64,000 nt of DNA from Ophelia neglecta (Eukaryota), in assembly GCA_965285935.1 (NCBI GenBank), contig OZ260663.1:14074001-14138000 (forward strand), written 5' to 3'. The translations under genes and the position numbers were made by a program. The notes beneath the pieces are model-generated. The model was given only the letters and a program-made list of their open reading frames with translations, searched no databases and was not told where the DNA came from. Within the stretch, counting starts at the first letter, position 1. Each line of letters begins with the position of its first letter. Below are positions 691 through 64,000 of this stretch, piece by piece.

Positions 691-784
691 TACTGATTTA
701 ACAATTACAGCATGTTTTTTTCTTTTTCAGGTAAGTTGTTCTGAACAATTATGATAGTGTGACCTATGTCTTCATATGGTAAGT
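691..784 (+). other. Candidate recursive splice site with 48-nt cryptic exon (731-778)
   Basis: Branch-like TACTGAT (691), poly-pyrimidine TGTTTTTTTCTTTTTCAG|GTAAGT, second donor ATG|GTAAGT at 779. Confidence 0.7.
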
Positions 785-40281: not shown

Positions 40282-40389
40282 GTTGTATTTTACGTTTGCT
40301 TTCATGTAATCTAGTATTCATGTTTGTATTTTATGTCATTTCATGTAATATAATAGTCATGTTTGTATTTTATGTCTTTTCAGGTAAGT
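40282..40389. repeat. 39-40 bp tandem repeat overlapping the splice acceptor
   Basis: GTTTGTATTTTATGTC.TTTCATGTAAT.TA.TA.TCAT x about 2.7; a further partial unit at about 40078-40100 precedes the MITE. Confidence 0.85.
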
Positions 40390-40453
40390 TTTCTGCTCTT
40401 TAAGCACATTAATTAGGCATGCTCTCTTGCAAGAATACCAGTCCAAGGTAAGT
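40361..40453 (+). other. Candidate recursive splice site with 64-nt cryptic exon (40384-40447)
   Basis: GTTTGTATTTTATGTCTTTTCAG|GTAAGT, second consensus donor AAG|GTAAGT at 40448. Confidence 0.65.
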
Positions 40454-46209: not shown

Positions 46210-46679
46210 AATTATCGCTCACAGGTGAAGAAAGCATGCATGGTAATCCCCTGACGAAGATATTCCAATGCTCTCATAGTGGGTGGAATTCCACTTACAA
46301 GACATGGTTTCCATGCTTCTAGTGCTAAGATACTCAACAGGCGATACATAGCCCCATATGTCATGTCGACAACATGATAAATAGGTCGAATACTTAACTT
46401 TGATGCTTTTTCGACTGTGTACGTTTGCTATCAGTCTGCCAAGGTGGTAATTGTAGTTTTACCTTGACGCCATTAAGTAGGTCAGGTCATAGCCGGTCAT
46501 ACTCGCTGTCGGCACCTCAAGTTACCCAAGTAGCCGGGTATTGAAGGAGACTATTCAAACGCCCGCCGAGTCCCCGGAATGTTGATTCACAGAGGGTGGA
46601 TACACGTCGTGATTTCATACAAAGTGCTATTCAACGGGAACCCATGTGTTGGTAACTAACTACAAAGTGGTAAGGTAAA
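46210..46679 (+). promoter_or_regulatory. Putative promoter/5'UTR block of copy A
   Basis: Colinear conserved patches with 62643-63069: AATTATCGyTCACA, GACAACATGwTAAAT, ATCAGT..CAAGGyGGT, GGTCAyACTCGCTsTCGGCACyTCAA, ACAAAGTrCTATTCAA. Inr-like TCAGTC at 46431. GC/CpG-richer sequence at about 46030-46200. Confidence 0.6.
46479..46499 (+). promoter_or_regulatory. DR4-like element plus extra half-site
   Basis: AGGTCA(46484)-tagc-CGGTCA with an overlapping AGGTCA at 46479. Confidence 0.5.
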
Positions 46680-47502
46680 ATGTCCTCAGGTGCAGCAGGC
46701 AGTGTGGATGCACACAGGACTAGTTTAACGATATTAATTTGGTTTATTACCATTCTGGCCGTTGTTTCTGGGAATGTTTCCCCGGCTGAGAATGTGCAGG
46801 TAGTGCGGCTAGGAATTATTCTTCCCGCTAAACCTCCGCCTCATTGCTCGAGCATAAAAGAGGTTCAAACGGTGATGGATTTCGCCTTGGGACGGGTCAA
46901 CAATGGCTTGTTGGATAACATAAGCAGTGTTGAGGGTATAATCGGGGCTGATAACGAGCTTAAACAGGGGGAGATACTTGTCAGGAACTTAGAAGGGAAT
47001 ATTGTTCGGCTTCAGGCCAAGTATGTTGATTCCCAATGCTCGGATCTTTATGCCCCGATCGCCGCTATGAATCTATTTTATAACCGAGAGGTGGATGTTT
47101 ACTTCGGGCCCTGCTGTAAATATGCCCTCTCTCCCGTGGCCAGATACACAAACATCTGGGGGCTACCCGTCATTACGCCCGGGGGACTAACGGAAGCTTT
47201 CAGTGACAAGAGGGAGTTCCCTCTCCTGACTCGCTTCGTGGCCCCCTACGACAAACTGGCCAAGTTCATAACCCGGATATTTATTGCCTTCGGATGGAGG
47301 ATAGGCGGCCTACTATGGCACAATAACATAATATATCGTACTCTGGGCAGCTCGGAGTGTGCCCAAGTTGCCACAGCGCTTATCAGACTCATGAGAAGCA
47401 TGCCCGAATTTGATGACCCATACAAGGAAACTTTTGACGAGGGCGCTTTTGACAATTTTGATTGGGATCGTATTTTGGCAGGGATTAGGAACAATTCACG
47501 CA
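46680..47502 (+). CDS. First coding exon (copy A) of a natriuretic-peptide-receptor-type membrane guanylyl cyclase: signal peptide + N-terminal ANF_receptor ligand-binding domain
   Basis: Hydrophobic leader SLTILIWFITILAVVSG, then family motifs RLGIILP, YVDSQCSD, VDVYFGPCCKYALSPVARY, WGLPVITPGG, EFPLLTR, FGW. Ends ...IRNNSR at CGCA|GTGAGT (823 nt, phase 1), matching the known exon 1 boundary of vertebrate NPR1 (..GR|V). ORF read-through to 47591 is intron. The cyclase domain is not in the window, so an NPR-C-like product cannot be excluded. Confidence 0.92.
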
Positions 47503-50499
47503 GTGAGTATTTATTAAGGATATTTTCTAAATGTTCCAGGGTTTGTTTGCATGTCTCAACTAATCTGTCCCGTATGACTTGTTATTCATAGATAAACGCG
47601 AAAGGCCATGTACACAGAATACTATCTGATAAGGCAATCTCAGACGGTCACATTTCATATTTTGCACGCTGTCTTTCAAATAGACGTGACTAACCACACT
47701 ATCTTGTTAATAGAAAAATATCGATATAAATAGAGGTGTTGCAAGCCATATCACTGCAGTTATCAGCATGATAGCAAAACATTACAAACAGTTTTTGGCC
47801 ATCTGCCATGTTAAGTATGTAAATATGTGTGTGGCACACGGTAAGATTGATAGCTCTTGATACCAGTCAGTTTGGCCTGACTACCGTTGATGCAGGAATT
47901 ATTGTAGAACTTCCAAGTTAAGATTAAGAGCAAGATCAAATTTATATCTTGCAAAAGTGTAAATGGAATTTATTTACTGAAAGCAATTACGCCACAAATC
48001 TTTTTGGGCAGGTGATGCCTAGCAACGTAGAATATCGTTTTTCCTTTTGACTGAAGGCAGGGACGGAGGTAGAGAGGCGGTGAAAAGGTGGGGTAGAGGG
48101 GTGGGGTGGAGGTCGGCGAGTTGGTGGGGGTGCATGAATACAATTTTGAAATTTGCATACACTATATGACGTACGTAAAATTCCCATTACAAAATCCATT
48201 TAGCTTGGAAAGAAGCTTTAAGTTTAAAGTCAGAACCACCCTCACCCCTACCCGATCCTAATTAGCGTGCCACTTCTACTGTCAGTAGTGTTTTACGTGC
48301 ACATTTGACCTCATCATGTCAGATATTATTAAACATTAATTAATAATGATTTAATAGTACATGGTCAAGGCATTGTGGTAATATACACGTTCCTTGTCAA
48401 CGTTTGACGAGCGGCCTTTAAACACTGCGCTAAACCATTATCTGGTCACGCGACCCAGAACTCCCTTATGTGTACCTCTAAATCGAATAGTCAATTCCAC
48501 AATTCCAGTATTCCTAGCAAAATATATGGAGGACACTGGAGGAAACTCAGAATACAATTACTATAAGGTTGGAAATAAAGCAACAATAGAGTCTATATAC
48601 CGATTTCCGTATACAAAGGAAGGTTCATACAGCTGTCGCATAACTGTATGGTACTCTAGAGATTAATATATTTATACAGTGACCTAATTATCGCAGCCGT
48701 ATCACTACTCTATGATATCTAGTCGCGGGATCAAACCCTGGAAGGCAGTCAGCCAGCACGCTGAAGTAGCCAGCCGTGTATGAGAGGGATGCAGACATCA
48801 TTAATATTGCATCTGAAAGGAATAAATTAAACATATTTAGAACTGTAAAGGGGCAATGCATGGTATATTTGTGTCATAACAAGTCAAAAACATGACATAT
48901 CTCGTGTGTTTACAGGATTTTTATATTCGGAATGTATGGCCAATGCTTGAAATAGCCCTACACATTTATGACGTGCCTCTTCCCAGAACCGTCACAAAAG
49001 TCACTATACATCTGGTGGTCTTGTGCTAAATAGGGAATCTGCGCAATATTATGGTCACATTACAATGTGAACATACTACACGGCAGTCAAATACACGCAA
49101 ATATCTCTTGGCCGTAACCGAAGTTAATCCGCCAGACATTGAAATTTATTTTCGACACTGCAATAATATCGTGGCCGAAATACTGGTGCCTATATATGTG
49201 AATCCCTTCCGGCAGGGCGTTCGAGTCCTGATGGAATACCTTCTGCTATTACGGCTAGTAAGATGTCAGTTAATGACGGTGTATATATGTATTAGATTTA
49301 TTACCAGCGCGTCTGATTCAACAAATAGATGGATTAATATGTTTTTTTTACCCGAACACATAATGTAGGGATATGCCATGTATGACATAAAGCCAAGCTC
49401 GTTTGAAATATATGGTACATGTGATCGAAAAGGACAATTATTACCTCTAACATGATAACGAAATGACAGGTGCAGTGTGTTGGTCCGTCGTAACGAATTA
49501 AACGCGTCAATAATTCACGCTTACGTCTTTTGATGTGGCTTGCTTTAATGTATTCATCTTCTGATTTTAGTTTTTTCCGTTTCGTTTGTTCTATAGGGTT
49601 ATTTATTCAGTCGGTTCCCTTTTTTCAACAAGGGCATGCATTATCCGTTATGTTCGTTAACATGCATTATAGTGCAATTCGTCTGTTCCTAGTTGATTTT
49701 CATGATCTTTCAGCCATTTGGCAGGAGGAATAGCCGACGGATTAGAGGATTCCAGTTGTCAAAATCAAGACATGACATGTCCCTAACATAGCTCTGGTCT
49801 AACTGCCGATACTCGATATATTTTCATTAAAATCTTTAGAAGGCATCACGAGTCTGGCAACCTTTCATATTTTCATTACACAGAACCTCAGCTTCCCATT
49901 CGTAGCTCAGGCCATTTATCTTCGTCAAATCACTAAACCAACATCATACACATTTTCTAGGTATGCCACAGACAGGAGCATTTGACAGGCATTCAACGAA
50001 ACCTTGAAACTCTCCGCATCTAATATAATGTATGATTGAAATCTGTGCATGGTTGTGTTAAGAAAGTCTGCTTCTGTTATCTCAATTCTCGCACGCTCTT
50101 GTTGTGTTCCCTTCAGCCTCTTAGCACGGTAAGCAGTACACCCTAAGAGACCGATTGTTGAAAGCCTATCAGGCCAGATTATAAATGTCTTGGGAAATGT
50201 TTCTTTTGATATCTCTGACAAATGTCTGCGATGCGTAAAGATCCGGATTATGGCAGCATAAGTAGATTTCTTCGCTGAAACGATTTATTTCTCTCGCTGC
50301 AAAACAGTCATATGAATGAACCGTAGAACTAGAGACAAGGACGTGATTGTAACACACACACAACTTGTAATCTTTCTGGGTCAATGTGCAGCCTTGGAGG
50401 TGTGCATTTGATTACCGGATAAATCGTGCATATCTTTCCTGTGTGCATATCATAGGTTGATATTGATCCTTGATAAACAAGCCATGCTCAGAAGCCTGG

Positions 50500-50625
50500 A
50501 GTGTTGTTAGTAAGGCAGGCTGGCTGATAACTTAACGTATTATTATAATAATCTTTAGGTAAATGACGCGACATCCCAGGGTTGGAACGTTCATCCTGAC
50601 CCACTTGCTCTAACCCAAAGCCGGA
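50500..50625 (-). mobile_element. Decayed SINE head
   Basis: Reverse complement reads GGCTTTGGGTTAGAGC..GTTCCAACCCTGG..TCGCGTCATTTACCTAAAGA..CCTGCC, colinear with the 5' part of the SINE at 15133. Confidence 0.4.
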
Positions 50626-50730
50626 GGTCGACAGGTCTATCTTTAAATAAATCACCATGTTCCGTGTTTATTTAAATCACAAAATAATCATCAGATACAT
50701 GCTTTTCATAAATCGTGCATATGTTGTCCA

Positions 50731-50937
50731 AAACAAGGGGCCCCTAAAATTGTTCTTTTGACCAAACTTGTTGTAACCGATCATGTGAAATCTGAGTGAG
50801 AAATATCTCCATTTAGCGTGAAGATATTCTAAATCAAACAAGGGGCCCCTAAAATTGTTCTTTTGACCAAACTTGTTGTAACCGATCATGTGAAATCTGA
50901 GTGAGAAATATATCCATTTAGCGTGAAGATATTCTAA
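50731..50937. repeat. 105-bp tandem duplication (2 copies)
   Basis: Units start at 50731 and 50836 with one mismatch seen; each contains the palindrome AGGGGCCCCT. Confidence 0.95.
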
Positions 50938-53900
50938 TATCCAATGTTGCCAGAGTCCCATCCATACCCATCCCACACCCTGCCCCAACCCCTAAGTTGG
51001 GACCGTATCTATAGAGGGAACCAGTCGAGCAGTCATGTATCAGGTAGCCGTATTTGTTATGTTAGTTTCTTTCGAATCATAGAATCCCCGATCAGCTTAA
51101 AAAAGCAATTGATTTCAGCCCTACATTATCTAGGTATGCGTGAACAAGTGATGTAGTTCAACTGCCTGTAAAGGTCGTATTTGTTGCAGGAATATTGTCG
51201 AGAATTTATCAAAATAATTTTTGTTTCATAGCTTCTAGCATGTTCTAAACAAGCATGGAAGGACCATTTGAGCTAATGTAACAAGATTCGAATTCCCTAT
51301 ATTAATCTGTGACATTGATAACGACAATTTGGTCATTGACCTGGCTAGGAACAATTTACAGCAGTGTAGTGAACGAAAGCAGTGCCATTCTTGTTACAAT
51401 GAATATCTGTCTAATTAAACTCTGAAACAAATCAGATTAACATTTAAAGTCATCAATGACCGTCTATCCGCGAGCTGTATTGTGCTCAATCACGTAAGGT
51501 TCTACTCAAATTGATTGGTATGCAATAAATGGAATGTTCAAAGATATTAATTCAACTGCCTTGAATATGTGGTTATATATCTTACACATCTTAATGGTTT
51601 CGATTCCAAGAAATTTCCTAAATTGTTTTAAACAAATCTATAACTTAAAACTTGTCCGTTTTATACTTATATAAGTAAAACAATAACAGGAGTTTATGAT
51701 GTTATATGAGCGTCAACGTGCACCTATTGATACAGCTTGAGCCTGCAATGAAAATATACTAAAACAGATTTTATGGTTGCTTATGCAACATCCCGTACGC
51801 TTAGAACATGATTATGAAAGCAAAATGCACGCTCCCGTGACTCGTATTGCATGATCATGTAATGCAGGATTATGTTCGATATGAGTTCCCTGTCTAAATG
51901 TGTTTGCTTTTTTTCACGCGATGTGTCTTTGTAGTTTTCGCGTTATATGCTCGTTTTTCACCTCAGTAGATAGCGGGCTCATTCGTGCAGAAGAACATTC
52001 TCATGTTGAGTTTATTGTGACAGTTCGCCTGCTGCCGCCATTTTTTCAGTATATCAACACATCCTACTATCAACTTAAAACTAACACCGACGCATTTGTT
52101 TTGTTAGCAGCTCTTCCGCAATCCACAGTCAAGGAAGTCATAATATTGATTAAACGGATAAATCAAAATACTATCAAATATTGTTTCAACGTGATACAAT
52201 GACGATTTGTTTAGTTAACGACTTCAAGGGGCACACGTTACTGTTGATATTCGGGTCAGATTCATGATGAAAAAGGAGTGAATTAATAATTGATAACTCT
52301 TACATGTTACTCCGATTCCCCACTGCTTCCACTGAATTAATTATTAAGACAAAGTGTGTAGATTTTTTAATTGTTTTTAAATGTAATCAATTCGTAATTT
52401 TGGCTGATAATGTTTGCAAAGCAAAAGCGCATGTGTTCAAACAGAAAATGAATCAAACATGTTATTATAAATGAAGCGCACGAGATGTGTATATATGTGA
52501 CCTTACTAGAACAATCTCTTTGTAATTGATAAAGTGTATGAGCAATGGATTTTTAAAGCACGGAGTGGATACCCGGCAGACAATTGCAAATAATAATTCT
52601 AGAATAATCCTTTAAATAGGGTCAGAACTAACCAGGAACCACCAGCGGCAGCACCACCATTATCAGAAATCAATATTAAGCCAGCAAACATTAAATAAAC
52701 ATGTAAAAAGAAAATTCCAAACAGAAAATTGAAATCACTGCAATATTATGTTGTCAACAGTTGATTATAACATATGCGATGTTTATACAATTTTAAAAAA
52801 CTGAGATTATGCGCGTACAAATAATCAAACGGGAAGGCGTTCTGTTTTAAACAATATTTGATGACAAGAATTTATTATTTTCTGCGCCTCAATATATATA
52901 TATGACTGATAATGGTATAATCACTGCTACGCTATAAGGTGGTGACATACCACAGCTCGCTCGTGTCGTAGAACCAATTGATCAGTTGTCAGTGCCATTA
53001 CCCAAGCACAATCAGCAACCACCACTTATCAAGATTTGGTACGTGCTGTCAAGAATGTTTCTGTTACGACCAGGTTATTGAAAATCACCGTCCACTCCAC
53101 TCCACTCTATTACTACGCTCAAACCATCTTTTTAGAAATATATAGGCCCTTTCTGCCAATAACCAACTGGGTAATATAAATGGCTATTAGAAAGAAAGTA
53201 CACGTTCTTCCTAGAATTACTGTTGGCAAAACAGATTTAAATCACTCCCGTTGGCACTTAAACATATTAAAACGCCAAACATACAATGGCTTTTTTGTAC
53301 TCAACTCAATTTGTATCTTTATTGATCCGACTAAAACATAATTTAGAAGACGTAGAGGATTATCGGTCTTAATTAAACAGGGGGGGGGGGGGCAAAAGCT
53401 ATTGCGCCTAAAACAAAGTTTGTTACCTTTAGTGTCAACGCATATATGATAAGCGGCAGCTTAATGGGAATTGTATGCCATATTTAATAAATGTGTCTAA
53501 TTTAAAGGTTACTTGAAAAATTCCGAATCTTGTAAAATATTATTGCTACATGAATAACATTCAGACCAATTCCTGCAGGCATCTGTTGAAAAGGCATGTA
53601 TAGTTACTGATATTTTCCGGAATATTTCGAAAAAAAATTGATATACACATGTACGTGTACTATGTACCCTCTCCTGTTCATCATAGGAAATTTCCAACCT
53701 ATTACTGTCCAGAAATGGCCAAAATATTGCATTCGTTGACCCCTTCCCTAAGTTACCATTTGCGGGTATTCATTACCCTTAAAGGTTGGCTGATATGATA
53801 ATCACACCTTTTTCGTGGTATCTGTTTCTGCTCTTAACCTTAAAAGCAGATATCAAGATAAACCAAGTGATAGGAGAAGCAATAGAAAACTGTTATTATC

Positions 53901-55573
53901 ATTCCTGTAAATCGACTATGTTATGATTCATTGTGTGTACGTCATTGAATATGTCAACAATACTCGCCAAGATTCTATTTGAAATAACCGATTGCCACTC
54001 GTGAATGAAAGGTTGTAAGACATGGTACGAGATACCGTAAAATACTAGATATATAAATACGAAACGAACAAACGAGAGTAAGGTTCAGGTGGGGATATTC
54101 CATCCCTAACCCTAGCAACTCCCCTAAACCTGTTTCATTTAGATACTTTCTCGTAGCCATGCCTCGTGTATGGTACTCTGTGTCAGGTTTTACAGTAGGC
54201 CCTCGTAAATTGTAGCAGTCCGTTATTGCCTTTCAAGTCCCATTGCACTCCTAGAATAACACGGACGGGTCAATGAAAAATTCATGTTTCTCCCTTAAAA
54301 TCTAATAGTTTTCGGTAACGGCTGGAAAAGACATAATTATCCTCTCAGCTACACACAAAATGGCTGACGTAATTGGAATTAAAAAATAGTTATTCCTTTG
54401 TGCCTCTGAAAATGCGTATTTGTCGAGGTCGATGCCTGCAATTATTAATGTGCACTCTTTGCTTTAGCGGAGAGAAAATGGTTACACATGGCAGTAACCC
54501 GATCTCCTGATGGTCTATATTTTTTAACTTTAAGCTGAGGATTTATAGATATAATTTCCAAAAAATATGGTATACTTTTACGACTTAAGTGATATGGTAA
54601 TATTTCAGGATGTGTTGAAGCATCTGTGCTACAGATAAATTAGCTAGAAGAGTGTTACTATTGCATAGAGTCACTGGCCTTATTTTTCCAATATAAGCTT
54701 CATTAGTAAAACTTGTCCTGTTGATTCAGCGTGTTTTGTACCAGACAAAGCCCTGACATCTGTTAACTGAAATGCCTTTCACTTTCAAAAAGTGGTTGAG
54801 CCTACAAAGTGTTTTTCTTGGCGTTCATTTTAGTGTGAAAAATGTCGAAGGCTGTTGATTTGTTGTTTGCGAGTATTGGTCAATATAAGCTATTCGTTTC
54901 CCAAGAATGGAATCTCAAATAATCAGTTGAGTTGACCTATTTGTTTCTTTAGCCTTATTAACCCGGCAGTTCGCGTCACTGACAGAGGCCATGTGTCTAA
55001 TAATATGTGCTTTTATTTACATAATGCCGGAAATACCGTGTTAATGCTGCTTAGATGGCAGGACAGTTCCATTCTTAGGAAACACATAGCTTATATTAAC
55101 TGTTACTCTTTTGTATGGGACAAGGCCCATTTTGTTGTCAAAAGACGCTAATTAGTTCTGATCATTTTCCATTGTGAAGCAATGTACCCATTATAGATTA
55201 TAGATTTCGGCTACTAATGTCTAAAGAAAATGTTGGAACACAACAAAAAGTTATTGCGGTTGGACAGATCCTTTCGACTTCAAATTGTTATATTGCATGG
55301 AAAGTTTAATGGGACCACTGCCATTATAGCGTGAGATCAGCAACATTGTATAGGTACCATATTATGCTGCTCTATGTAGCTTAAAAACAACTAAGGCTGC
55401 TTTATGGTGGCTAATACTAGTGAACACTTTTCCTCATTCAATGGCGATCGATGATATATTCCCAACTGTTATGCTTGCCTTTCTTCGGTGAAAGCAAAAT
55501 AATACACACTAACGATTGATGTATCCCATAAGGCATCTGTTTATTGTGAGTTGTGACCGTCTACCGCAGAACT

Positions 55574-56099
55574 GACTAGTGATGAGCGTGTCTCATGCTT
55601 CCCTTGCATATAAACCATTGTCCATTTAAACGACCGGACATATCTCTCCCTTTTCCAGCTTTGATTAATCTCAATTTTTATGCAATTTAGGTTTAAAATT
55701 TTTATATTCTGATAGTTTATTCCTATAAGTAATCTTCATCACTTGCAGCCTTGAAACCCATACAAAAGTAACAATATAATTAACAAAACATTGGGGATAT
55801 ATCTTCCTAAAACTGTTTTTGTCTAATTTGGCCGGTGATGGTGAATAATATGAAAAGACTATGAAGACTAGTGATGAGCGTGTCTTATGCTTTCCTTGCA
55901 TGTAAACCATTGTTCATTCAAACAACCGGACCGATCTCTCCCTTATCCAGCTTTGAATAATCTCAATTTTTAGCATGCGCATTGATTTGTTAAGTCAGCT
56001 GGGCATTTTTTTTTCTGACAGTTATAACATTGTATTTTTGTGCAATTTAAGTTTAAATTATTTATAATCTGATAGTTTATTCCAAAAGTAAATCTTCAT
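55574..56099. repeat. Diverged direct repeat (about 165 bp x2)
   Basis: GACTAGTGATGAGCGTGTCT...AATCTTCAT at 55574-55739 and 55866-56099; the second copy has about 70 extra bp. Confidence 0.9.
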
Positions 56100-56193
56100 G
56101 AACCGTACAAGAATGCTTTGGACGAGGGGACTTTTGACTTTTCTGACTCGAATCTTATTTTCGCATGGATCAGGAACAATTCACGCATTGAGT
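56097..56193 (+). pseudogene. Relic third copy of the receptor first exon (3' end only, dead donor)
   Basis: Translates HEPYKNALDEGTFDFSDSNLIFAWIRNNSR versus copy A DDPYKETFDEGAFDNFDWDRILAGIRNNSR. Ends AGGAACAATTCACGCA-TTGAGTAT versus functional -GTGAGTAT. Confidence 0.9.
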
Positions 56194-59100
56194 ATTTATA
56201 TTAATTCGTTTTGATTTAGTAATAATATTGTTTCAAAGAAAACTGACTACGTTCTGTATATGAATCACTTTCTTGTCTTTCCAACCCGACCATACCCGAC
56301 CATCAATGCTGTCAAACTATTAGGGTTAACGTAGTTATGTTGAAAAGTATCAATTAGTATTAACTGCATTATTATGGTCATGAAGATTTGTCCGAGGGAC
56401 CAAATCGTAATTTGATCAACGCTGAATGCATGAAGGGAGGGAATTGAGATAGTGTATTGGTATTCACTTTATTACACACTAGCCAAATACTAGGAATGGA
56501 TAATGCAGGTCAATTTTAACCCATGTTTTCTTACGTAATAGTTTTTTCGTTCAATCTTGCCTGCCCGAGTAATCTGATTATGTGATTCAAGTCGTGACCT
56601 ATTTCATCTGGGTAATGTAATCACAAAATGGCAGGTACGACAGTATGACAGTAGAAACCCAACTATTACTAGTAGAACATGAATAAGACACTACCGGAAA
56701 CGACACAAAACCGAAAATAAATTCATCAAGCCTAATACCCTCATTGTTGAGTAGTAAAACTCGTTCCTGTCGTTTTGCGTTGGTTTTTTAATCGGTGAAG
56801 CAGACGTTTCAACTGCATTCGTGTCTTTTTTGAAAACGCATAGTCATTGAGTTTAATATTCATCGACCATGCCTAAAGATTATACATATTCTGCCAGTGA
56901 AATAAATTCGTACCTTCTACCTTTCAAAAATTGAACAATATCTTGATCAAAGCCCTAAAACCATTAGTAAGCAGAGTGATCCATATATGGAGACATAATC
57001 AACAACATTATGGCATTGTTACATAGCAAGCAACCTCCCGTCCATGGCATTATCAATACAATGCTGTGTCTCATATACAACACGCAATACACTCACATTG
57101 GGAAGTATGAAAACATATCAAAGACTCCTCCCATTAGCATATGATTGTTTTTTTCTGACTTTTTCTGGTTTAGTGCGATGACTGAAATAAGGGAAATATG
57201 TTGACTACTTCTCAATGATCGTGTTATCAATAATAATATATTTAATATTTATTTCGGCTTAAGCTTCCTGATGATTTCGGATTGATAAAATGGGCTACTT
57301 TGATTAATAGCTGTGCTTTCTCTGCGGCTTTTCCACTTCCTCGTTTATGAAATTTAGCAAAATATGTCCTGATTACCATAGGAAACATAGATTTGTTACC
57401 AATTGCTCGGTTTAAAAACATGTTTCTAGTGAAGACCGACCAACAATGCTGAAAACGGTTGGTTTTGTACGTAAAGGTAACAACATTAACAAAGCCATGT
57501 GGCACAAGAGCGTCAAGATGTGCCCCTCTTCATGTATCAGATATGAAAGGCAATACATCAAGTTTTCATCTAGGGATGCCTGTTCCATGTTTATTTAGAT
57601 AAAGGAGCCGTCTTGGATTAGTGACCGAATGTGTATAGCGAGCCATGTCAAATCCATTATTCAAAAAGACGATGACCCACAAGCCAACCTATAATCTCCT
57701 CTCACTAGGCTTAGGAATGCTCCATCAGTAGTATATGATATCACACCAGTGTCCAACACTTCCTTGTGATTGCGTGGTGTATATAATTGGCAAATTGATT
57801 GTAATCTATTACGAAACTGCAATCAATGTGCGAATTAAAATGGAACACAGCTTGTGTAAAAAGTCCGTGCGATCATCTAGGCCAATAGTCGGTGCATTTA
57901 TGGGCCAGATAAACTGTACATCGTCTTCGACCATTATAAATTATAGAACCCATTAATTCCTAAGTACTAAAGTGTACAGATAACCAATCTCTGTTTGACA
58001 GATTAATGCCATTCGACAAGCTTTTTTTATTTTGGCTCAAAGTACATAATTAGCATGAACTGATATCCGAAATATACATCAAAACAACATAAAGACCTAT
58101 TCGTTTTTTAAATCTGTTCCAGCTCCAAAATATTAGTGCGCATTGAGGCCATAAGCTAGATAACCATTGCTTTGCAAAGAGATCTTTGTTAATCATGGGC
58201 ACGTCGTTCGCCTTTGATAATTAGAATAAAGCTAATCAGTTCGCTCTTCGCCAGATTGGGTAATATCAATGACCTATAAAAATAAGTGAGAGGTATTATT
58301 TCAATTTGATACAAGACTGTTTAACACAGCGCTTGTCAGTTTTTAATTCAGTCAGCGGTATTATATCAACATGAAACATAACTCCTAAATGACAAGCGCA
58401 GGGTGAAACAGTCATTAATCTCTAAAATAGATCGAAACGCCATAAATAAAATGCTTTGTGGTAACCCACTGGATTCAGGATTTTATTGACGAGGTTATAA
58501 ACGTTATTTATGTGACTTGGAGGATTAGCTCTCTCAGCAAAGCGGGCAGCCCAAAAATTCTTTCGTGTAGACAATTTAATTGCTTTGCTGTTTTTTCGTT
58601 TTCCACGGTGCTTGTAAACATATACAATTTTGGCGGCGGCCTAACAGTTATTTCATGCCACATTTGTATGAATTTGTTTGATTTATATTGCGCTTTGAAA
58701 GGTTCTAAAACATCATTATCGTCAATTTAACCTTTATTTAGCATGTCTAGTGTTCAACATGTATATTGCAATCGCTTTGACTGGGTTTAGGGTTGATTAT
58801 ATGTAGTGTTGCGTGCAACTAAGCAAATGTCAATGTAAGGTCTACAGCCTTTGGCTATTTCTATGCAGAAATATAACTAATATACACTATGTGTACCATG
58901 TACCATAGAAAGTTGTTGCTTGTCTGGAAACTGGTCATATTTTATGATGGTGGCACCATGTTTTGAATTTAAACACGTCTGCCCGTTAAACAGCCGAGGA
59001 GCTCGTTAAACCGCGATATTTGATATACAATGTAAGCCAAGTCAATAGGTCTGTTTTCCTTCGACTTCAACATTATACAGACTGCGGATTAAGTTTGTAC

Positions 59101-61858
59101 GCTTAAACCGACTATTTTGGTGATTTGGGCCGGCTGGTACGGATTTGTAAAATGATGAGGAGATTGGGTCCGAGCTTAATTTCGCATCTTTTATTTGTTA
59201 TTGGATGCCACTGTTTATCGACTTATGGCTGTCACCTGGTTTATGCGAATTTAGTCGTGGCTGCTCTTCTGACGAATACTTTCTTCCATAGGAGCTATAT
59301 ATATAATGACGTAGTTTAGTCATGAACGCCTAGACAATGTTACAAAATCCTTACGCAATCATTCTACCTTTGGTTGGGTTTTCTCCAGTATTTTCATTTG
59401 CATCTCGTGCATATTGTTGAACAAAAATATGTGCTAGATTAACACTCATTTAGTAGAGTTTATATCTTTCCATATTCAATCAAAAAACAATTGAAATAAA
59501 ATTGCCATCTTTTTTAACAATATTCAATGAATGATTGAACTCTCCTTCTAGGCCAGGCAGAGATGATTGAAAACGGTATAAAGACTTTTGGACATTTCAT
59601 TTTCGTAATATGGCTATGAAAATATGGGCATACCTTCACCACATAGGCGATAAATGGGGCTTTAGTGCAGCAAAAATCATTAGATCATTTGATGGCAGTG
59701 CACATTGAAATTGAGTGCATTTGTCCGCTGCATTTATATGTAGTTCGTTGGTGCATTCCCAACCACTAAGCCACTTTGCAGTTTGAGGAAACGCTGTTTG
59801 GAGGATGAATTTTACGTATCTCTGTTGTTATGTTTCTTGAGACAACTCTACCTAGTCTTAACTTGAAGTGAGGGCTCAATACGCCATATTACCAAGGACA
59901 AATTTCATCATGGCCCTGTTTTGACCACTAGATCTTTTGTTTTGTTGTCTGGCTCTCATAATGAAAAACTGTATGTATCTCATTGCAAGTGTTGTCACTT
60001 TTAAGGATTTTTTATGATTACTTCATTTAAACTTTATGTTCTGTGAGGGAGGAGGGGATTTATCGTTTTAGTGGTAATCGGCTGGTGGTTCCTGGTAAAT
60101 TTGTACCACTTTAATTGTCACTTCCTTGCTTTGTAGCCGGGTGTCTACTTCCGTATATCATAAAATAGTAACTGAGTGAGTGTGTTCCCGTCTGTTAGCG
60201 ACGGAATAAGTTACGAGGTGGTCTGGGTCGTACGTGTTATCATCTTATAAATCCATGTTGCCAATGTTTATCACCGGCTAATTGGATCTCAACTAGTTTA
60301 TAGTTACTACGTCTGAGTTGAACCACCGCCTGTACCATGTGCATGTAGATTATTTTAATATCGTCACGCTAACCCACAAACTGTTAAATAGTCAATTTAC
60401 TTGAACAATACTTAAAAGCTTCCATACCGCAACATCGATTTATCTCCTTTCAACACGGCTACCAACATGTCAGAACATGTCACTTTCTGCAAGAACTTGC
60501 AAAACAAATGTGAATTTAGAGTAAAAGCACCTGGATCGCATAGTTTTTGTCAATTAATGCAATGACACTACTCAAATTACTAGTGACAACAATTTATGTA
60601 AAATTCATATTTCCTAAACAGTGGTCGGTTTTCGTAATGTCGGCCGTCTCGTATGTTGATAGGCATAAATATATAACTAGTGAATACAATTTAGCCCAAT
60701 ACATTATCACTCCATGTCGTGAATATCCTATAGATAAGGATGTATTTCAGCATTCAATGCAAGGTCGACAAGGGGTTAACTGTGCTATACACCATTCAAC
60801 TTCACCCGTAACCCATGATTTCAATGCGACTAGTCACATGATATACACCGCTTTATTGTAACACTACAGACGATAAACATCGCTTCCATTCCGGCTGGTA
60901 TGGTTAACAAATGATTACAATCATTTAAACGGTTCGTATATACCTTTTTGTTGATACCGATGTTGTATATGATTGCCAGTCTATTGCATTATGTGTCAGA
61001 AAACGGATTGCGAATGTCCCGTGTGCAAACTATAGCTGGGAATGTCCCATTGATGTAATAATTCAGGCTAACTAGGAGTCCCATGTTTTATCAAGTATTT
61101 TGTCTAGATTATTCCCCCGAGGCGTTAACTTGATCGCGAAGTAGCTGATAAGGGAATAAGTAATGCTGTTGAGGTAATGTAGAAATGTATACGTTCCTGC
61201 GATTGGATTATTTGGGGTTTAACGGGACATAAGCACCATGTTTAGCATCTTTAGGTTGGCTTAATTTCATATGTAAGTCTCAGAATTGTGTTTATTTATA
61301 ATAAAAAAAATGTAGACATTGTATCAGTTATATGTTATTTAGCATTATCGTTATGAAAAATTCTAGGTGTATTTGCCAGGTTTTGGTTCTTATTAAACAG
61401 CATTAGCTCAGGTAGATTAGAAGTGAGTGATTCAATATAAAGGTAAAATCGCGTTTTGAAAGACTCAAAATTTATAATTTGTTTCCATATATCTCCTATA
61501 TGGTTGAACGGATTTTTCTTTTAAATATCTTTATACACGGATTTTTACAATCTATTATATTATACACTTGCAATCATTACGATATGTTGTAAACTAAATC
61601 GTTCAGTTATGGTAACTGAACCAACCCGCACTATTTGGACGGCACTGAATCAGCGACATATCAATAGATTCAATTATATTTTCTATGATATAAGACTGCA
61701 TTTTTGAAAAAAGGGCATCATTGTAAAGAAGTGGTCCTCTGTGACTTAATACCACGACATTTTTAAATGTAAGCACTAGGTTATCTCCACTACTGTATTT
61801 ATTCTTATTACACTGGCATATCGACTTGAAAATCAGTCGCAAATACATATGGCGATGT

Positions 61859-62360
61859 AAGGGGGAAGAGAGCTAAAAGTGGGAGGAGGGAGGGAGGGAA
61901 AAGGCGACATGGGAAAAAGAGGGGGGGGGGGGCGAGGAGGGAAGGAGTGAGAGAGGTATTGAGAGGGAAAGAGAAGGGGAGAAAGGGAGGGAGGGGGAAG
62001 GTGGGGAGCAGTAGAGGAAGACGGGAAGGAGGGAAGGAGAATGGGACTGAAACAAGAAAGGAGGCGAGGAGGTAGAAGCGAAAGGAGGGAGGGAAGGGTG
62101 GAGGAGGGAAGGAAGTAGGGAGGGATGGAGGCATTGAGGGAGAGAAGGAGGGAGCGAGGAGAGATCCTTTAAGGGACAGGATGGAAGGAGGGGGTAGGAG
62201 ACACAGAGAAGGAAGGAGTAAGTGAAGGAATGAGGGGGAGGAGGGAGGGAAGGAATGAAGGAGGGAGGGAGTTATGAGGTGGCGAGGGAAGAAAGGATGC
62301 AAGGGGGAAAGGTGAGTTGGAGAGAGGGGGAAACCGAAGGAAGTTTTGAAGGGGGGCAGG
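61859..62360 (+). repeat. About 500-bp G/A-rich low-complexity polypurine tract
   Basis: Near-continuous GGAG/GGAA/GGGA repeats; explains the Pro/Ser/Leu-rich minus-strand ORFs. Confidence 0.9.
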
Positions 62361-62642
62361 GTGCCACTGGTGTCATTCAGTAGGCTAGTAGGTACACCAT
62401 TGCCTATATTTGACCACCTTGATCCGGCCCACCCTATCTCCTACCCCGCACCCCCCACCCTAAGTCCGATCGACCAATCCCAACAGTCACTATTAAGAAT
62501 GCTCACCTGTTTATCAAGTCTCAGTCATTCTGTATATGTTAGCTTCGAATTTGAGGTAGGTGATCAACCGCATGGTTATAGATCCCGTAGAGCATATACG
62601 GATTACAAGACGTCTTTGCGCTGATCACAGGAGAAATTGGAT

Positions 62643-63069
62643 AATTATCGTTCACACCTGTGGATGCCATTGGCCAAGGATAATGTCCCATTGGTGTTTT
62701 GGTATCAGCAACGTGGCAGGAGCCTAGACATTGCGATATAGCATGAATACACAGGTATACTAGTTTCCGTGTTATGGTCTAGTTTAATAGCAGCCGCCGC
62801 TGATGTCTGACAACATGTTAAATGGAACGAACAGTTAATTTTTATTGCTTGGTGTGTGTGTTAATTAAGCATCAGTTAGTCAAGGCGGTTTAATTGAAAT
62901 GTTTGGCATGAAGTTTGAAACTGTGCCAGGTCAGAGCAGGTCACACTCGCTCTCGGCACTTCAAATCAGCGACAAGGTTTAAAGGCGATCATTAATAGCG
63001 ACCTGTGAGTCCCGTAATCTTTAGGCAAACTCGGCGGAAACACATTGTGCTCACACAAAGTACTATTCA
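62643..63069 (+). promoter_or_regulatory. Putative promoter/5'UTR block of copy B
   Basis: Homologous to 46210-46679; Inr-like TCAGTT at 62872. Confidence 0.6.
62928..62943 (+). promoter_or_regulatory. Perfect DR4 nuclear receptor response element
   Basis: AGGTCA-gagc-AGGTCA; homologous site retained in copy A. Confidence 0.55.
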
Positions 63070-63937
63070 ATGCTAAAGAAAGTATTGGAAATCATTAAAA
63101 TGGCGGAAAGTATAGTGTTGTTTACAGCCGCCGGCAGATTGGATGAAAACAGGCCCAGTTTTGCAATATTATTTTCCTTTATGAGTATTTTGGCCGTTGT
63201 TTCGGGGAATATTTTCACGGCGGAGAATGTACAGGTAGTCCGGCTAGGAATTATTCTTCCCAAGAAACCCCCGACTCATTGCTCGAGCATAGAAGAGATT
63301 CAGCCGGTCATGGATTTCGCCTTGGGACGGGTTAACAATGGCTTATTGGATAACATAAGCAGTGTTGAGGGTATAATCGGGGCGGATAACGAGCTTAAAC
63401 AGGGGGAGATACTTGTCAGGAACTTAGGGGGTAATATTGTTCGGCTTCAGGCCAAGTATGTTGATTCCCAGTGCTCGGATCTTTATGCCCCGATCGCCGC
63501 CATGAATCTATTTTATAACCGGGAGGTGGATGTTTACTTCGGGCCGTGCTGTAAATATGCCTTGTCTCCCGTGGCCAGATACACAAACATTTGGGGGCTG
63601 CCCGTCATTACGCCCGGGGGACTAACGGAAGCCTTCAACGACAAGACGGAGTTCCCTCTCCTGACTCGCTTCGTGGCCCCCTACGACAAACTGGCCAAGT
63701 TCATAACGCGGATGTTAGTGTTTTTCGGATGGCGAAATGCCGGGATTCTTTGGCACAATAACATACTATATCGTTCTCTGGGCAGCTCGGAATGTGAACA
63801 AGTCGCCACATCATTAATCAGACTTATGCGAATCATGCCGGAATTTGTTGAAACATACAAAGAAATATTCGACGAACATGCTTTCGACCAATTCGACTGG
63901 GATAATGTTTTGTTCGGGATAAGGAACAATTCACGCA
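63070..63937 (+). CDS. First coding exon (copy B) of the same NPR-type receptor guanylyl cyclase
   Basis: Paralog of copy A with the same motifs and same phase-1 donor CGCA|GTGAGT (GT at 63938-63939). Start is ATG 63070 or, with better context (aaaATGg), 63100. Confidence 0.92.
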
Positions 63938-64000
63938 GTGAGTATCTAACATATCTGTTATAATTAGGCTTCCATCGATAAAATCACAACCTACTGATTC

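What the first reader, a model, noticed from the sequence alone, without database searches (positions are those of the whole stretch)
46210..63943. Candidate variable-first-exon array for a receptor guanylyl cyclase (protocadherin/UGT1A-like architecture)
Seen: three same-strand copies of only the first exon in 17 kb (two intact, one dead). The intact copies each have a homologous upstream block and signal peptide, and share the identical phase-1 donor AGGAACAATTCACGCA|GTGAGTAT. I could not find the expected exon 2 (starting about I-V/I-I-L-C) or any TM, kinase-homology or cyclase exon in the 15.5 kb between A and B. Known: NPR-type cyclases have about 20 further exons, and clustered protocadherins and UGT1A use promoter choice among tandem first exons spliced to constant exons. 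Inference: one locus swaps its ligand-binding N-terminus onto a common cGMP signalling module. I know of no such description for this family but cannot search the literature.
Basis: partly seen in the sequence, partly recalled or inferred. Interest (0 to 1): 0.92.

Follow-up and report, generated by a model that had tools for sequence, protein, structure and literature searches.

The report
Variable first exons, one guanylyl cyclase
The two exon copies in this window are two of eight alternative first exons, each with its own start codon and signal peptide, lined up ahead of one shared set of receptor guanylyl cyclase exons, so a single gene can probably make up to eight receptors that differ in half of their ligand-binding domain.

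Summary
Exons A (window 46680-47502) and B (63070-63937) are intact, 84% identical ANF-receptor first exons. The third copy is a 105-bp relic whose donor reads TT.

It is not yet supported by RNA from this animal.

- **Exon census:** whole-genome searches find eight same-strand first exons on C5 (13.94-14.20 Mb). There is only one exon 2, one exon 3 and one TM/kinase-homology/cyclase series (14.2176-14.2473 Mb).
- **Second locus:** a mirror locus on C5 has four first exons to one constant set.
- **Signs of use:** eleven of the twelve first exons keep an ATG, a signal peptide and a phase-1 donor that fits the exon-2 acceptor. dN/dS is 0.12-0.27.
- **Other species:** two other species keep the same exon order. 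RefSeq isoforms of the orthologue in bivalves, a nemertean and a horseshoe crab differ only upstream of this junction.
- **Age:** a tree puts at least three exon types before the split of annelid-like worms, molluscs and nemerteans.
- **Precedent:** C. elegans gcy-28.c and gcy-28.d use separate promoters. I found no paper describing such an array.

The scan had noted sub-features of this window before, but not this array on other DNA.

The parts
46680..47502 (+). Variable first exon A (V5 of 8). Holds the ATG, the signal peptide and about the first half of the ANF-receptor ligand-binding domain. It ends in phase 1 (last base A) before GTGAGT.
   Evidence: ORF and sequence; Pfam PF01094 E=5.6e-19; matches the NPR-A ectodomain, PDB 1DP4 residues 57-154; dN/dS against B is 0.27.
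63070..63937 (+). Variable first exon B (V6 of 8). Same layout as A, with an alternative in-frame ATG at 63100 and the same phase-1 donor.
46363..46679 (+). Block upstream of A that is homologous to the block upstream of B (presumed 5'UTR and promoter). It is 78% identical, about the neutral level.
   Evidence: blastn and alignment. No strong acceptor-like site lies within 400 nt upstream of the ATG.
62803..63069 (+). Block upstream of B, homologous to the block upstream of A.
56095..56199 (+). Relic of the 3' end of an A-type first exon, with the donor GT mutated to TT. It is a dead cassette.
   Evidence: tblastn piece of 29 aa; blastn 81% over 105 nt; alignment.
709..784 (+). Recursive-splice-like site 1: pyrimidine tract, then CAG|GTAAGT (junction after 730), then a second GTAAGT at 779. 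It lies in the long intron that transcripts from V1-V4 would have to remove.
   Evidence: The pattern occurs twice on the + strand of the window against 0.02 expected by chance; a related tract-plus-AGGTAAGT scan found none on the - strand of the 194 kb.
40362..40453 (+). Recursive-splice-like site 2: pyrimidine tract, then CAG|GTAAGT (junction after 40383), then a second donor at 40448 (a 64-nt recursive-splice exon layout).

Best explanation
A and B are the fifth and sixth of eight alternative first exons (V1-V8, C5:13,939,700-14,197,450, + strand) of one NPR1-like/gcy-28-like receptor guanylyl cyclase gene. Its constant exons 2 to about 22 lie at C5:14,217,585-14,247,277, starting 80 kb past the window end.

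What is shown:
- The exon census, with one constant set for eight first exons.
- The matching splice phase.
- Selective constraint on the first exons.
- Conservation of the architecture in other species and phyla.

What is inferred:
- Each V exon carries its own start codon, signal peptide and about the first 52% of the ligand-binding domain. Transcription probably starts just upstream of one V exon.
- That exon's phase-1 donor is then joined to the single phase-1 acceptor of exon 2. This gives ...IRNNSR-I-VVLCASPD... for A and B. V exons further downstream are removed as intron.
- For V1-V4 the removal may be stepwise, through the two recursive-splice-like sites in the window.
- The result would be up to eight receptors with different N-terminal ligand-binding halves on one TM, kinase-homology and cyclase module.
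For: - **Census.** Searches with B, V3 and V1 as queries, all candidates scored, find exactly 8 such exons in this cluster and 4 in the mirror cluster, plus one decayed copy. Exon 2 and exon 3 each occur once per cluster in the whole genome.
- **Constant exons.** tblastn with a 1084-aa receptor cyclase lays residues 275-1081 once on the 194 kb and residues 13-275 four times. Cyclase Pfam hits occur only at 14,245,603-14,246,340. A TM-like exon lies at about 14,236,681.
- **Splice fit.** Eleven of 12 first exons keep an ATG, a signal peptide and a phase-1 donor at the homologous site. The exon-2 acceptor is phase 1.
- **Selection.** dN/dS is 0.27 for A-B (dS 0.37) and 0.12-0.27 for five other pairs. 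Unused copies do decay here: the relic at 56095, W2 with an insertion, and a copy with 4 stops at C5:12,997,776.
- **Synteny.** An A/B-type exon is followed 7-7.5 kb later by a V8/W4-type exon, with nothing constant between, in two other species.
- **Isoform precedent.** RefSeq isoforms in Tachypleus, Ostrea, Saccostrea, Crassostrea, Mytilus, Argopecten, Mercenaria, Mya and Lineus are 10-46% identical before this junction and 99.5-100% identical after it.
- **Age.** The tree has two deep V clades at 100/100 support, each mixing this genome's exons with mollusc and nemertean isoforms.
- **First-exon status.** No strong acceptor-like site lies just upstream of 10 of the 11 ATGs (W1 has one at -52).
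- **Long-intron signals.** Recursive-splice-like sites occur only on the + strand.
- **Model organism.** C. elegans gcy-28.c and gcy-28.d have separate promoters, different start codons and a shared 3' end (PMC9249223).
Against:
- No promoter element shared by the V exons was found.
- The block upstream of A and B is conserved only at about the neutral level.
- The evidence behind the RefSeq isoform models could not be inspected here.
- V2 has a weak donor (GTATGA) and W3 has a GC donor.
It was covered only by whole-genome protein searches.
Confidence: 0.78

Rival explanations
1. The V exons are alternative exons of one gene, but they are chosen by splicing rather than by promoter choice. A single upstream promoter or leader exon would drive the whole array, as in mutually exclusive exon clusters.
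For: No promoter evidence exists. No shared promoter motif was found. The A/B upstream block is only neutrally conserved. W1 and some related exons have an acceptor-like AG 50-60 nt upstream of the ATG.
Against: Every V exon carries its own ATG and signal peptide. Ten of 11 lack a strong acceptor-like site near the ATG. A and B have in-frame stops just upstream of their ATGs. The C. elegans orthologue uses two separate promoters (PMC9249223).
Confidence: 0.1
2. A and/or B, and other upstream copies, are orphan partial duplicates that are not spliced into mature mRNA. Only the V exon nearest the constant exons (V8) would be the real first exon.
For: No RNA data from this genome. Dead copies do exist in both clusters. 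The distances to exon 2 are large, 80-278 kb.
Against: dS of 0.37 between A and B, with dN/dS 0.27 and no gap or stop in 270 codons. In codons 76-195 pN is 0.01 and pS 0.12-0.2. Older pairs with saturated dS are still intact and keep phase-1 donors. A/B-type exons are conserved, with their donor, in three other species. Orthologous loci have several modelled first-exon isoforms.
Confidence: 0.08
3. Each V exon is a stand-alone gene for a short secreted protein of about 300 aa that reads into the intron, for example a decoy half-domain.
For: The open frames run 8-40 codons past the donors before a stop.
Against: Exon 1 encodes only about half of the bilobed ANF-receptor fold: Pfam positions 2-140 of 353, and the junction falls at residue 275 of a domain spanning 89-447 in P0115. 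The read-through tails are not conserved between A and B. A donor conserved in phase 1 at the same site in all copies and across phyla would be unexplained.
Confidence: 0.03
4. Assembly artefact, such as collapsed or duplicated haplotigs.
For: None found.
Against: A and B differ at about 20% of bases, and the other V exons are far more diverged. There are no N runs in the 194 kb and 100 kb that were read. The same exon order is seen in independent assemblies of other species.
Confidence: 0.01

Closest known systems
UGT1A locus (vertebrates)
   Same: A tandem array of paralogous first exons. Each encodes the signal peptide and the N-terminal substrate- or ligand-binding half, and each is spliced to one set of constant exons. 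Dead cassettes are interspersed. (The UGT1 architecture is as described in PMC3325998 and PMC1885805, listed.)
   Different: A different protein family (a receptor-enzyme rather than an ER transferase). About 21 constant exons instead of 4. The array spans 258 kb. Individual promoters are not demonstrated here.
Clustered protocadherins (Pcdh alpha/gamma)
   Same: Variable first exons encode extracellular parts and are joined to constant exons that encode the signalling part. The array is large, and there are signs of gene conversion between neighbours.
   Different: Pcdh variable exons encode the whole ectodomain plus the TM. Here the V exon encodes only about half of the ligand-binding domain. 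No conserved promoter element comparable to the Pcdh CSE was found. Stochastic choice is untested.
C. elegans gcy-28 isoforms c and d
   Same: NCBI names some bivalve, gastropod and insect relatives 'gcy-28-like'. The two isoforms have their own promoters (broad versus AIA-restricted), different start codons and a common 3' end (PMC9249223).
   Different: Two isoforms are described, not an array of eight. I did not check whether the worm isoforms differ in the homologous exon. The papers I read do not describe it as a variable-exon system.
RefSeq 'atrial natriuretic peptide receptor 1-like' isoform sets (Mercenaria, Mytilus, Argopecten, Ostrea, Saccostrea, Crassostrea, Mya, Lineus, Tachypleus)
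   Same: These are orthologous genes. Their isoforms diverge over the first 225-275 residues and are identical afterwards, switching at the same ...R/S/G|(I/V)-V/I-(V/I)-L/M-C-A junction. Their N-termini fall into the same deep clades as this genome's V exons.
   Different: They are computed gene models whose supporting evidence I could not see. Two to four distinct N-termini were seen per species in my sample, against eight here. I did not examine the genomic layout of those loci.
Mammalian NPR-A (NPR1)
   Same: The same domain order: ANF-receptor ectodomain, single TM, kinase-homology domain, cyclase. Exon A matches residues 57-154 of PDB 1DP4.
   Different: To my knowledge NPR1 has one first exon (from memory, not tested here).

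Membership tests
NPR-type receptor guanylyl cyclase | Extracellular ANF_receptor (periplasmic-binding-protein-like) ligand-binding domain | tested here: met
   PF01094 hits on A and B. Exons 2-6 match residues 275-497 of a Pfam-verified receptor cyclase. PDB NPR-A and NPR-C matches.
NPR-type receptor guanylyl cyclase | Single transmembrane helix between the ectodomain and the kinase-homology domain | tested here: met
   A hydrophobic 23-residue stretch in an open frame at C5:14,236,681-14,236,750, between exons 6 and 7. Its splice sites were not mapped.
NPR-type receptor guanylyl cyclase | Kinase-homology domain | tested here: met
   tblastn of P0115 residues 622-843 (its PF07714 region is 595-837) onto C5:14,240,860-14,243,407 at 50-74% identity.
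NPR-type receptor guanylyl cyclase | C-terminal class III cyclase catalytic domain | tested here: met
   PF00211 hits above the cut-off at C5:14,245,603-14,245,800 and 14,246,233-14,246,340. tblastn identity is 58-90% over residues 847-1081.
NPR-type receptor guanylyl cyclase | One continuous reading frame across all exons | tested here: inconclusive
   Each constant exon has an open frame and plausible AG/GT flanks, and the exon 1 to exon 2 phase fits. The joined model was deliberately neither built nor searched.
Multiple-variable-first-exon gene (UGT1A / clustered Pcdh type) | Tandem same-strand array of paralogous first exons upstream of a single set of constant exons | tested here: met
   8:1 and 4:1, with exhaustive scoring of candidates.
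Multiple-variable-first-exon gene (UGT1A / clustered Pcdh type) | Each variable exon has its own start codon and a donor compatible with the common acceptor | tested here: met
   ATG plus signal peptide in 11 exons, and phase-1 donors at the homologous site. Nine are GT[AG]AG, one is GTATGA and one is GCAAGT. The acceptor is phase 1.
Multiple-variable-first-exon gene (UGT1A / clustered Pcdh type) | Mature transcripts join each variable exon directly to the first constant exon | not testable with these tools
The only support is from orthologues' RefSeq isoforms.
Multiple-variable-first-exon gene (UGT1A / clustered Pcdh type) | An individual promoter in front of each variable exon | tested here: inconclusive
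   No strong acceptor-like site upstream of 10 of 11 ATGs, but there are no TSS data. The C. elegans orthologue has two promoters.
Clustered protocadherin-type choice mechanism | A conserved sequence element shared by the variable-exon promoters | tested here: not met
   No 8-10-mer shared by the ten upstream regions beyond what shuffles give. An AGGTCA direct repeat occurs only upstream of A and B and not in the orthologue.

The most novel reading that the evidence does not exclude
The NPR1-like/gcy-28-like receptor cyclase of spiralians is an ancient, conserved variable-exon receptor system dating from before the annelid-mollusc-nemertean split. It would have at least three old exon types and lineage-specific additions such as A and B. 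Cell-specific promoter choice would give individual neurons or tissues different ligand specificities on one cGMP output. Because these receptors work as dimers whose ligand site lies between two ectodomains, co-expressed variants could form heterodimers and multiply the repertoire, up to 36 dimer types from 8 exons.
Probability: 0.2. Interest if true: 0.85.

Novelty: new member of a known kind. Interest (0 to 1): 0.62.

Why it matters
Receptor guanylyl cyclases are usually thought to diversify by whole-gene duplication. The large gcy families of nematodes are an example, and so are the four complete tandem genes on C7 of this genome.

Here one gene appears to diversify its ligand-binding half by the UGT1A/protocadherin method, and the arrangement seems to be more than half a billion years old. 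If transcripts confirm it, three things follow:

- Counts of receptor cyclase 'genes' in spiralians understate the receptor repertoire.
- The many RefSeq models of about 830 aa that seem, from their length, to lack an N-terminus would have an explanation.
- There would be a tractable system for asking how promoter choice tunes peptide or chemosensory cGMP signalling in single cells.

It also gives an independent case for studying how splicing across 80-280 kb skips intervening donors, possibly with help from recursive splice sites.

Tried and rejected
- **Own-species proteins or transcripts.** The protein collections gave nothing above 65% identity to A, so there is no junction evidence from them.
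- **Fetching the upstream 140 kb (V1-V4 region).** I replaced it with whole-genome protein searches.
- **Shared promoter element.** An AGGTCA direct repeat conserved between A and B is absent from the other V exons and from the orthologue. A k-mer search of ten upstream regions did not beat shuffles. The bacterial-type promoter scan does not apply to this genome.
- **Literature.** Eight full-text searches found no paper on variable first exons in receptor guanylyl cyclases. Only the gcy-28.c/.d promoter usage turned up.
- **Ideas dismissed.** Hidden constant exons between A and B, an assembly artefact, and stand-alone short proteins; see the rival explanations.
- **Joined model.** All searches used single exons by reference.
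Full report
**1. What is in the window**

The window is C5:14,074,001-14,138,000 (+ strand) of a 762-Mb eukaryotic genome. The closest named relatives of its proteins are annelids (Capitella, Ridgeia), with a nemertean and a brachiopod almost as close. The animal is therefore a spiralian and probably an annelid.

- **Exon A** (46680-47502) and **exon B** (63070-63937) are the only ORFs of 180 aa or more in the 64 kb.
- They are 84% identical over 270 aa with no gaps.
- Both match Pfam ANF_receptor and the NPR-A ectodomain.
- Each starts with an ATG and a hydrophobic signal peptide.
- Both end at the identical ...AGGAACAATTCACGCA|GTGAGTAT, in phase 1.
- DNA homology covers about 320 bp upstream of the ATG and stops 11 nt past the donor.
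- The third copy is a 105-bp relic at 56095-56199 whose donor reads TT.

**2. Where the rest of the gene is**

I read 130 kb beyond the window and 100 kb of a second cluster. A 1084-aa horseshoe-crab receptor cyclase (P0115, Pfam-verified) served as the tblastn query.

- Its residues 13-275 align four times in the 194 kb: to A, B, V7 (14,195,058) and V8 (14,196,781).
- Its residues 275-1081 align only once, as a collinear series at 14,217,584-14,246,739.
- An independent exon-finding pass, comparing all minus-strand ORFs of the second cluster with this one, found the same single series of about 20 conserved exons and nothing else between the first exons.
- Exon 2 starts at 14,217,585 behind ttccttcacag.
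- A TM-like exon lies at about 14,236,681.
- Cyclase Pfam hits lie at 14,245,603-14,246,340.
- The constant exons have open frames and AG/GT flanks.

I did not build or search the joined model. Every search used single exons by reference.

**3. Census**

Whole-genome searches with B, V3 and V1 scored every candidate.

| Locus | First exons found | Strand |
|---|---|---|
| Cluster 1 | 8, with donors at 13,940,417; 13,983,807; 14,010,840; 14,017,602; 14,121,502 (A); 14,137,937 (B); 14,195,712; 14,197,450 | + |
| Cluster 2 | 4 (W1-W4), plus one decayed copy with four stops | - |

- Exon 2 and exon 3 each occur exactly once per cluster in the whole genome, again with all candidates scored.
- The ratios are therefore 8:1 and 4:1.
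- For contrast, C7:29.05-29.13 Mb holds four ordinary tandem receptor cyclase genes, each with its own exon 2/3 and cyclase exons.

**4. Are the first exons used?**

- Eleven of the twelve keep an ATG, a signal peptide and a phase-1 donor at the homologous position. V2 has GTATGA and W3 has a GC donor, cag|GCAAGT.
- W2 is split by a repeat insertion of about 330 bp.
- Nei-Gojobori dN/dS is 0.27 for A-B (dS 0.37) and 0.12-0.27 for five other pairs, some with saturated dS.
- Within A-B the middle of the exon is nearly frozen (pN 0.01, pS 0.12-0.2). The 3' third is older (pS 0.46-0.67).
- Dead copies exist beside the intact ones, so unused copies do decay in this genome.
- With one exon 2 per cluster, the only way these exons can contribute to a complete bilobed ligand-binding domain is by splicing to it.

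**5. Other species**

- Contigs from two other organisms carry an A/B-type exon (65-68% and 50-54% identical, donor ...NNSR a|GTAAGT). It is followed 7-7.5 kb downstream on the same strand by a V8/W4-type exon, with no constant exon between.
- RefSeq isoforms X2 and X3 of Tachypleus 'atrial natriuretic peptide receptor 1-like' are 46% identical up to ...SR|VIVMCASP and 99.5% identical afterwards.
- The same profile holds in Ostrea, Saccostrea, Crassostrea, two Mytilus species, Argopecten (3 N-termini), Mercenaria (4), Mya and the nemertean Lineus. The first roughly 240 residues are 10-40% identical and the rest is identical. The switch falls exactly at my exon 1/2 junction.
- A maximum-likelihood tree of 48 first-exon peptides has two deep clades, each with 100/100 support:
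  - V1, V2, V3, V4, W1 and W3 group with one set of mollusc and nemertean isoforms.
  - A, B, V7, V8 and W4 group with the other set, and with Capitella, Lingula and the chelicerates.
- Molluscan and nemertean loci thus hold both clades, as this locus does. The array therefore predates the split of these phyla.
- A and B belong to a divergent sub-type that I saw only in this genome and three unnamed related assemblies. They duplicated after the split from the closest of these.

**6. Mechanism**

- Ten of eleven V exons lack a strong acceptor-like site within 400 nt upstream of the ATG near the start codon (W1 has one at -52), as expected of true first exons.
- No shared promoter motif was found.
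- Two recursive-splice-like sites (pyrimidine tract, CAG|GTAAGT, second GTAAGT 48-64 nt later) lie at window 730 and 40383. Both are on the + strand, against 0.02 expected. They sit in the 103-kb gap between V4 and A, which fits long transcripts from V1-V4 crossing the window.
- In C. elegans, gcy-28.c and gcy-28.d are driven by different promoters (broad versus AIA-restricted). They have different start codons and the same 3' end (PMC9249223).

**7. What is missing**

Splicing of A and B to exon 2, and promoter choice, remain inferences. Part of the upstream array was examined only by whole-genome protein search.

**8. Verdict**

It is a new member of the multiple-variable-first-exon kind, closest in logic to UGT1A.

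It is also already implicit in RefSeq isoform models and in the two-promoter gcy-28 of C. elegans, although eight literature searches found no description of such an array.

Noticed in passing
window 709-784 and 40362-40453 (+): Two recursive-splice-like sites with a recursive-splice-exon layout, in the long gap between V4 and A. Both are on the + strand. The pattern is expected 0.02 times by chance and is seen twice.
   Followed up: partly
G000:C5:12,972,717-13,045,919 (-), loci L027-L034: A mirror-image paralogous locus with four first exons (W1-W4), one decayed copy at 12,997,776-12,998,165 and one constant exon set. Its constant exons are 64-98% identical in protein to those of the main locus.
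   Followed up: yes
L033 (C5:13,031,384-13,031,710, -): First exon W2 is interrupted after ...FCYLAMS by an insertion of about 330 bp rich in GGGGTCGAAATTCTACAT-like repeats. The rest of the exon, ending ...EEVGAQYG, resumes downstream. It is probably a disabled cassette.
   Followed up: partly
L030 (C5:13,002,373, -): First exon W3 has a GC donor (cag|GCAAGT) at the conserved phase-1 site.
   Followed up: no
G000:C7:13,263,251-13,317,838 (+): A possible third array: three ANF-type first-exon matches (13,263,251; 13,297,648; 13,300,505), one exon-2-like match (13,305,004) and one cyclase (13,316,037; 13,317,728).
   Followed up: no
G000:C7:29,048,480-29,128,939 (+): Four ordinary tandem receptor cyclase genes, each with its own exon 2/3 and cyclase exons. 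This is a useful contrast to the variable-exon loci.
   Followed up: no
window 46875-47502 versus 63265-63937: Mosaic divergence between A and B. Synonymous divergence is 0.12-0.2 in codons 76-195 but 0.46-0.67 in codons 196-270, which suggests partial gene conversion.
   Followed up: yes
window 46480-46520 and 62900-62940: An AGGTCA-type direct repeat (nuclear-receptor half-site-like) sits in the most conserved part of the A and B upstream blocks. It is absent upstream of the other V exons and of the orthologous exon in L036.
   Followed up: partly
proteins P0199, P0014, P0044, and the many RefSeq models of about 830 aa: Public gene models seem to struggle with such loci. The Lingula model matches exon 2 twice. 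Some predicted proteins carry two or three ANF_receptor matches, as expected if tandem first exons were fused into one model. Many models are about 250 residues shorter than their full-length relatives, as expected if they lack the N-terminal exon. I did not check either point.
   Followed up: no
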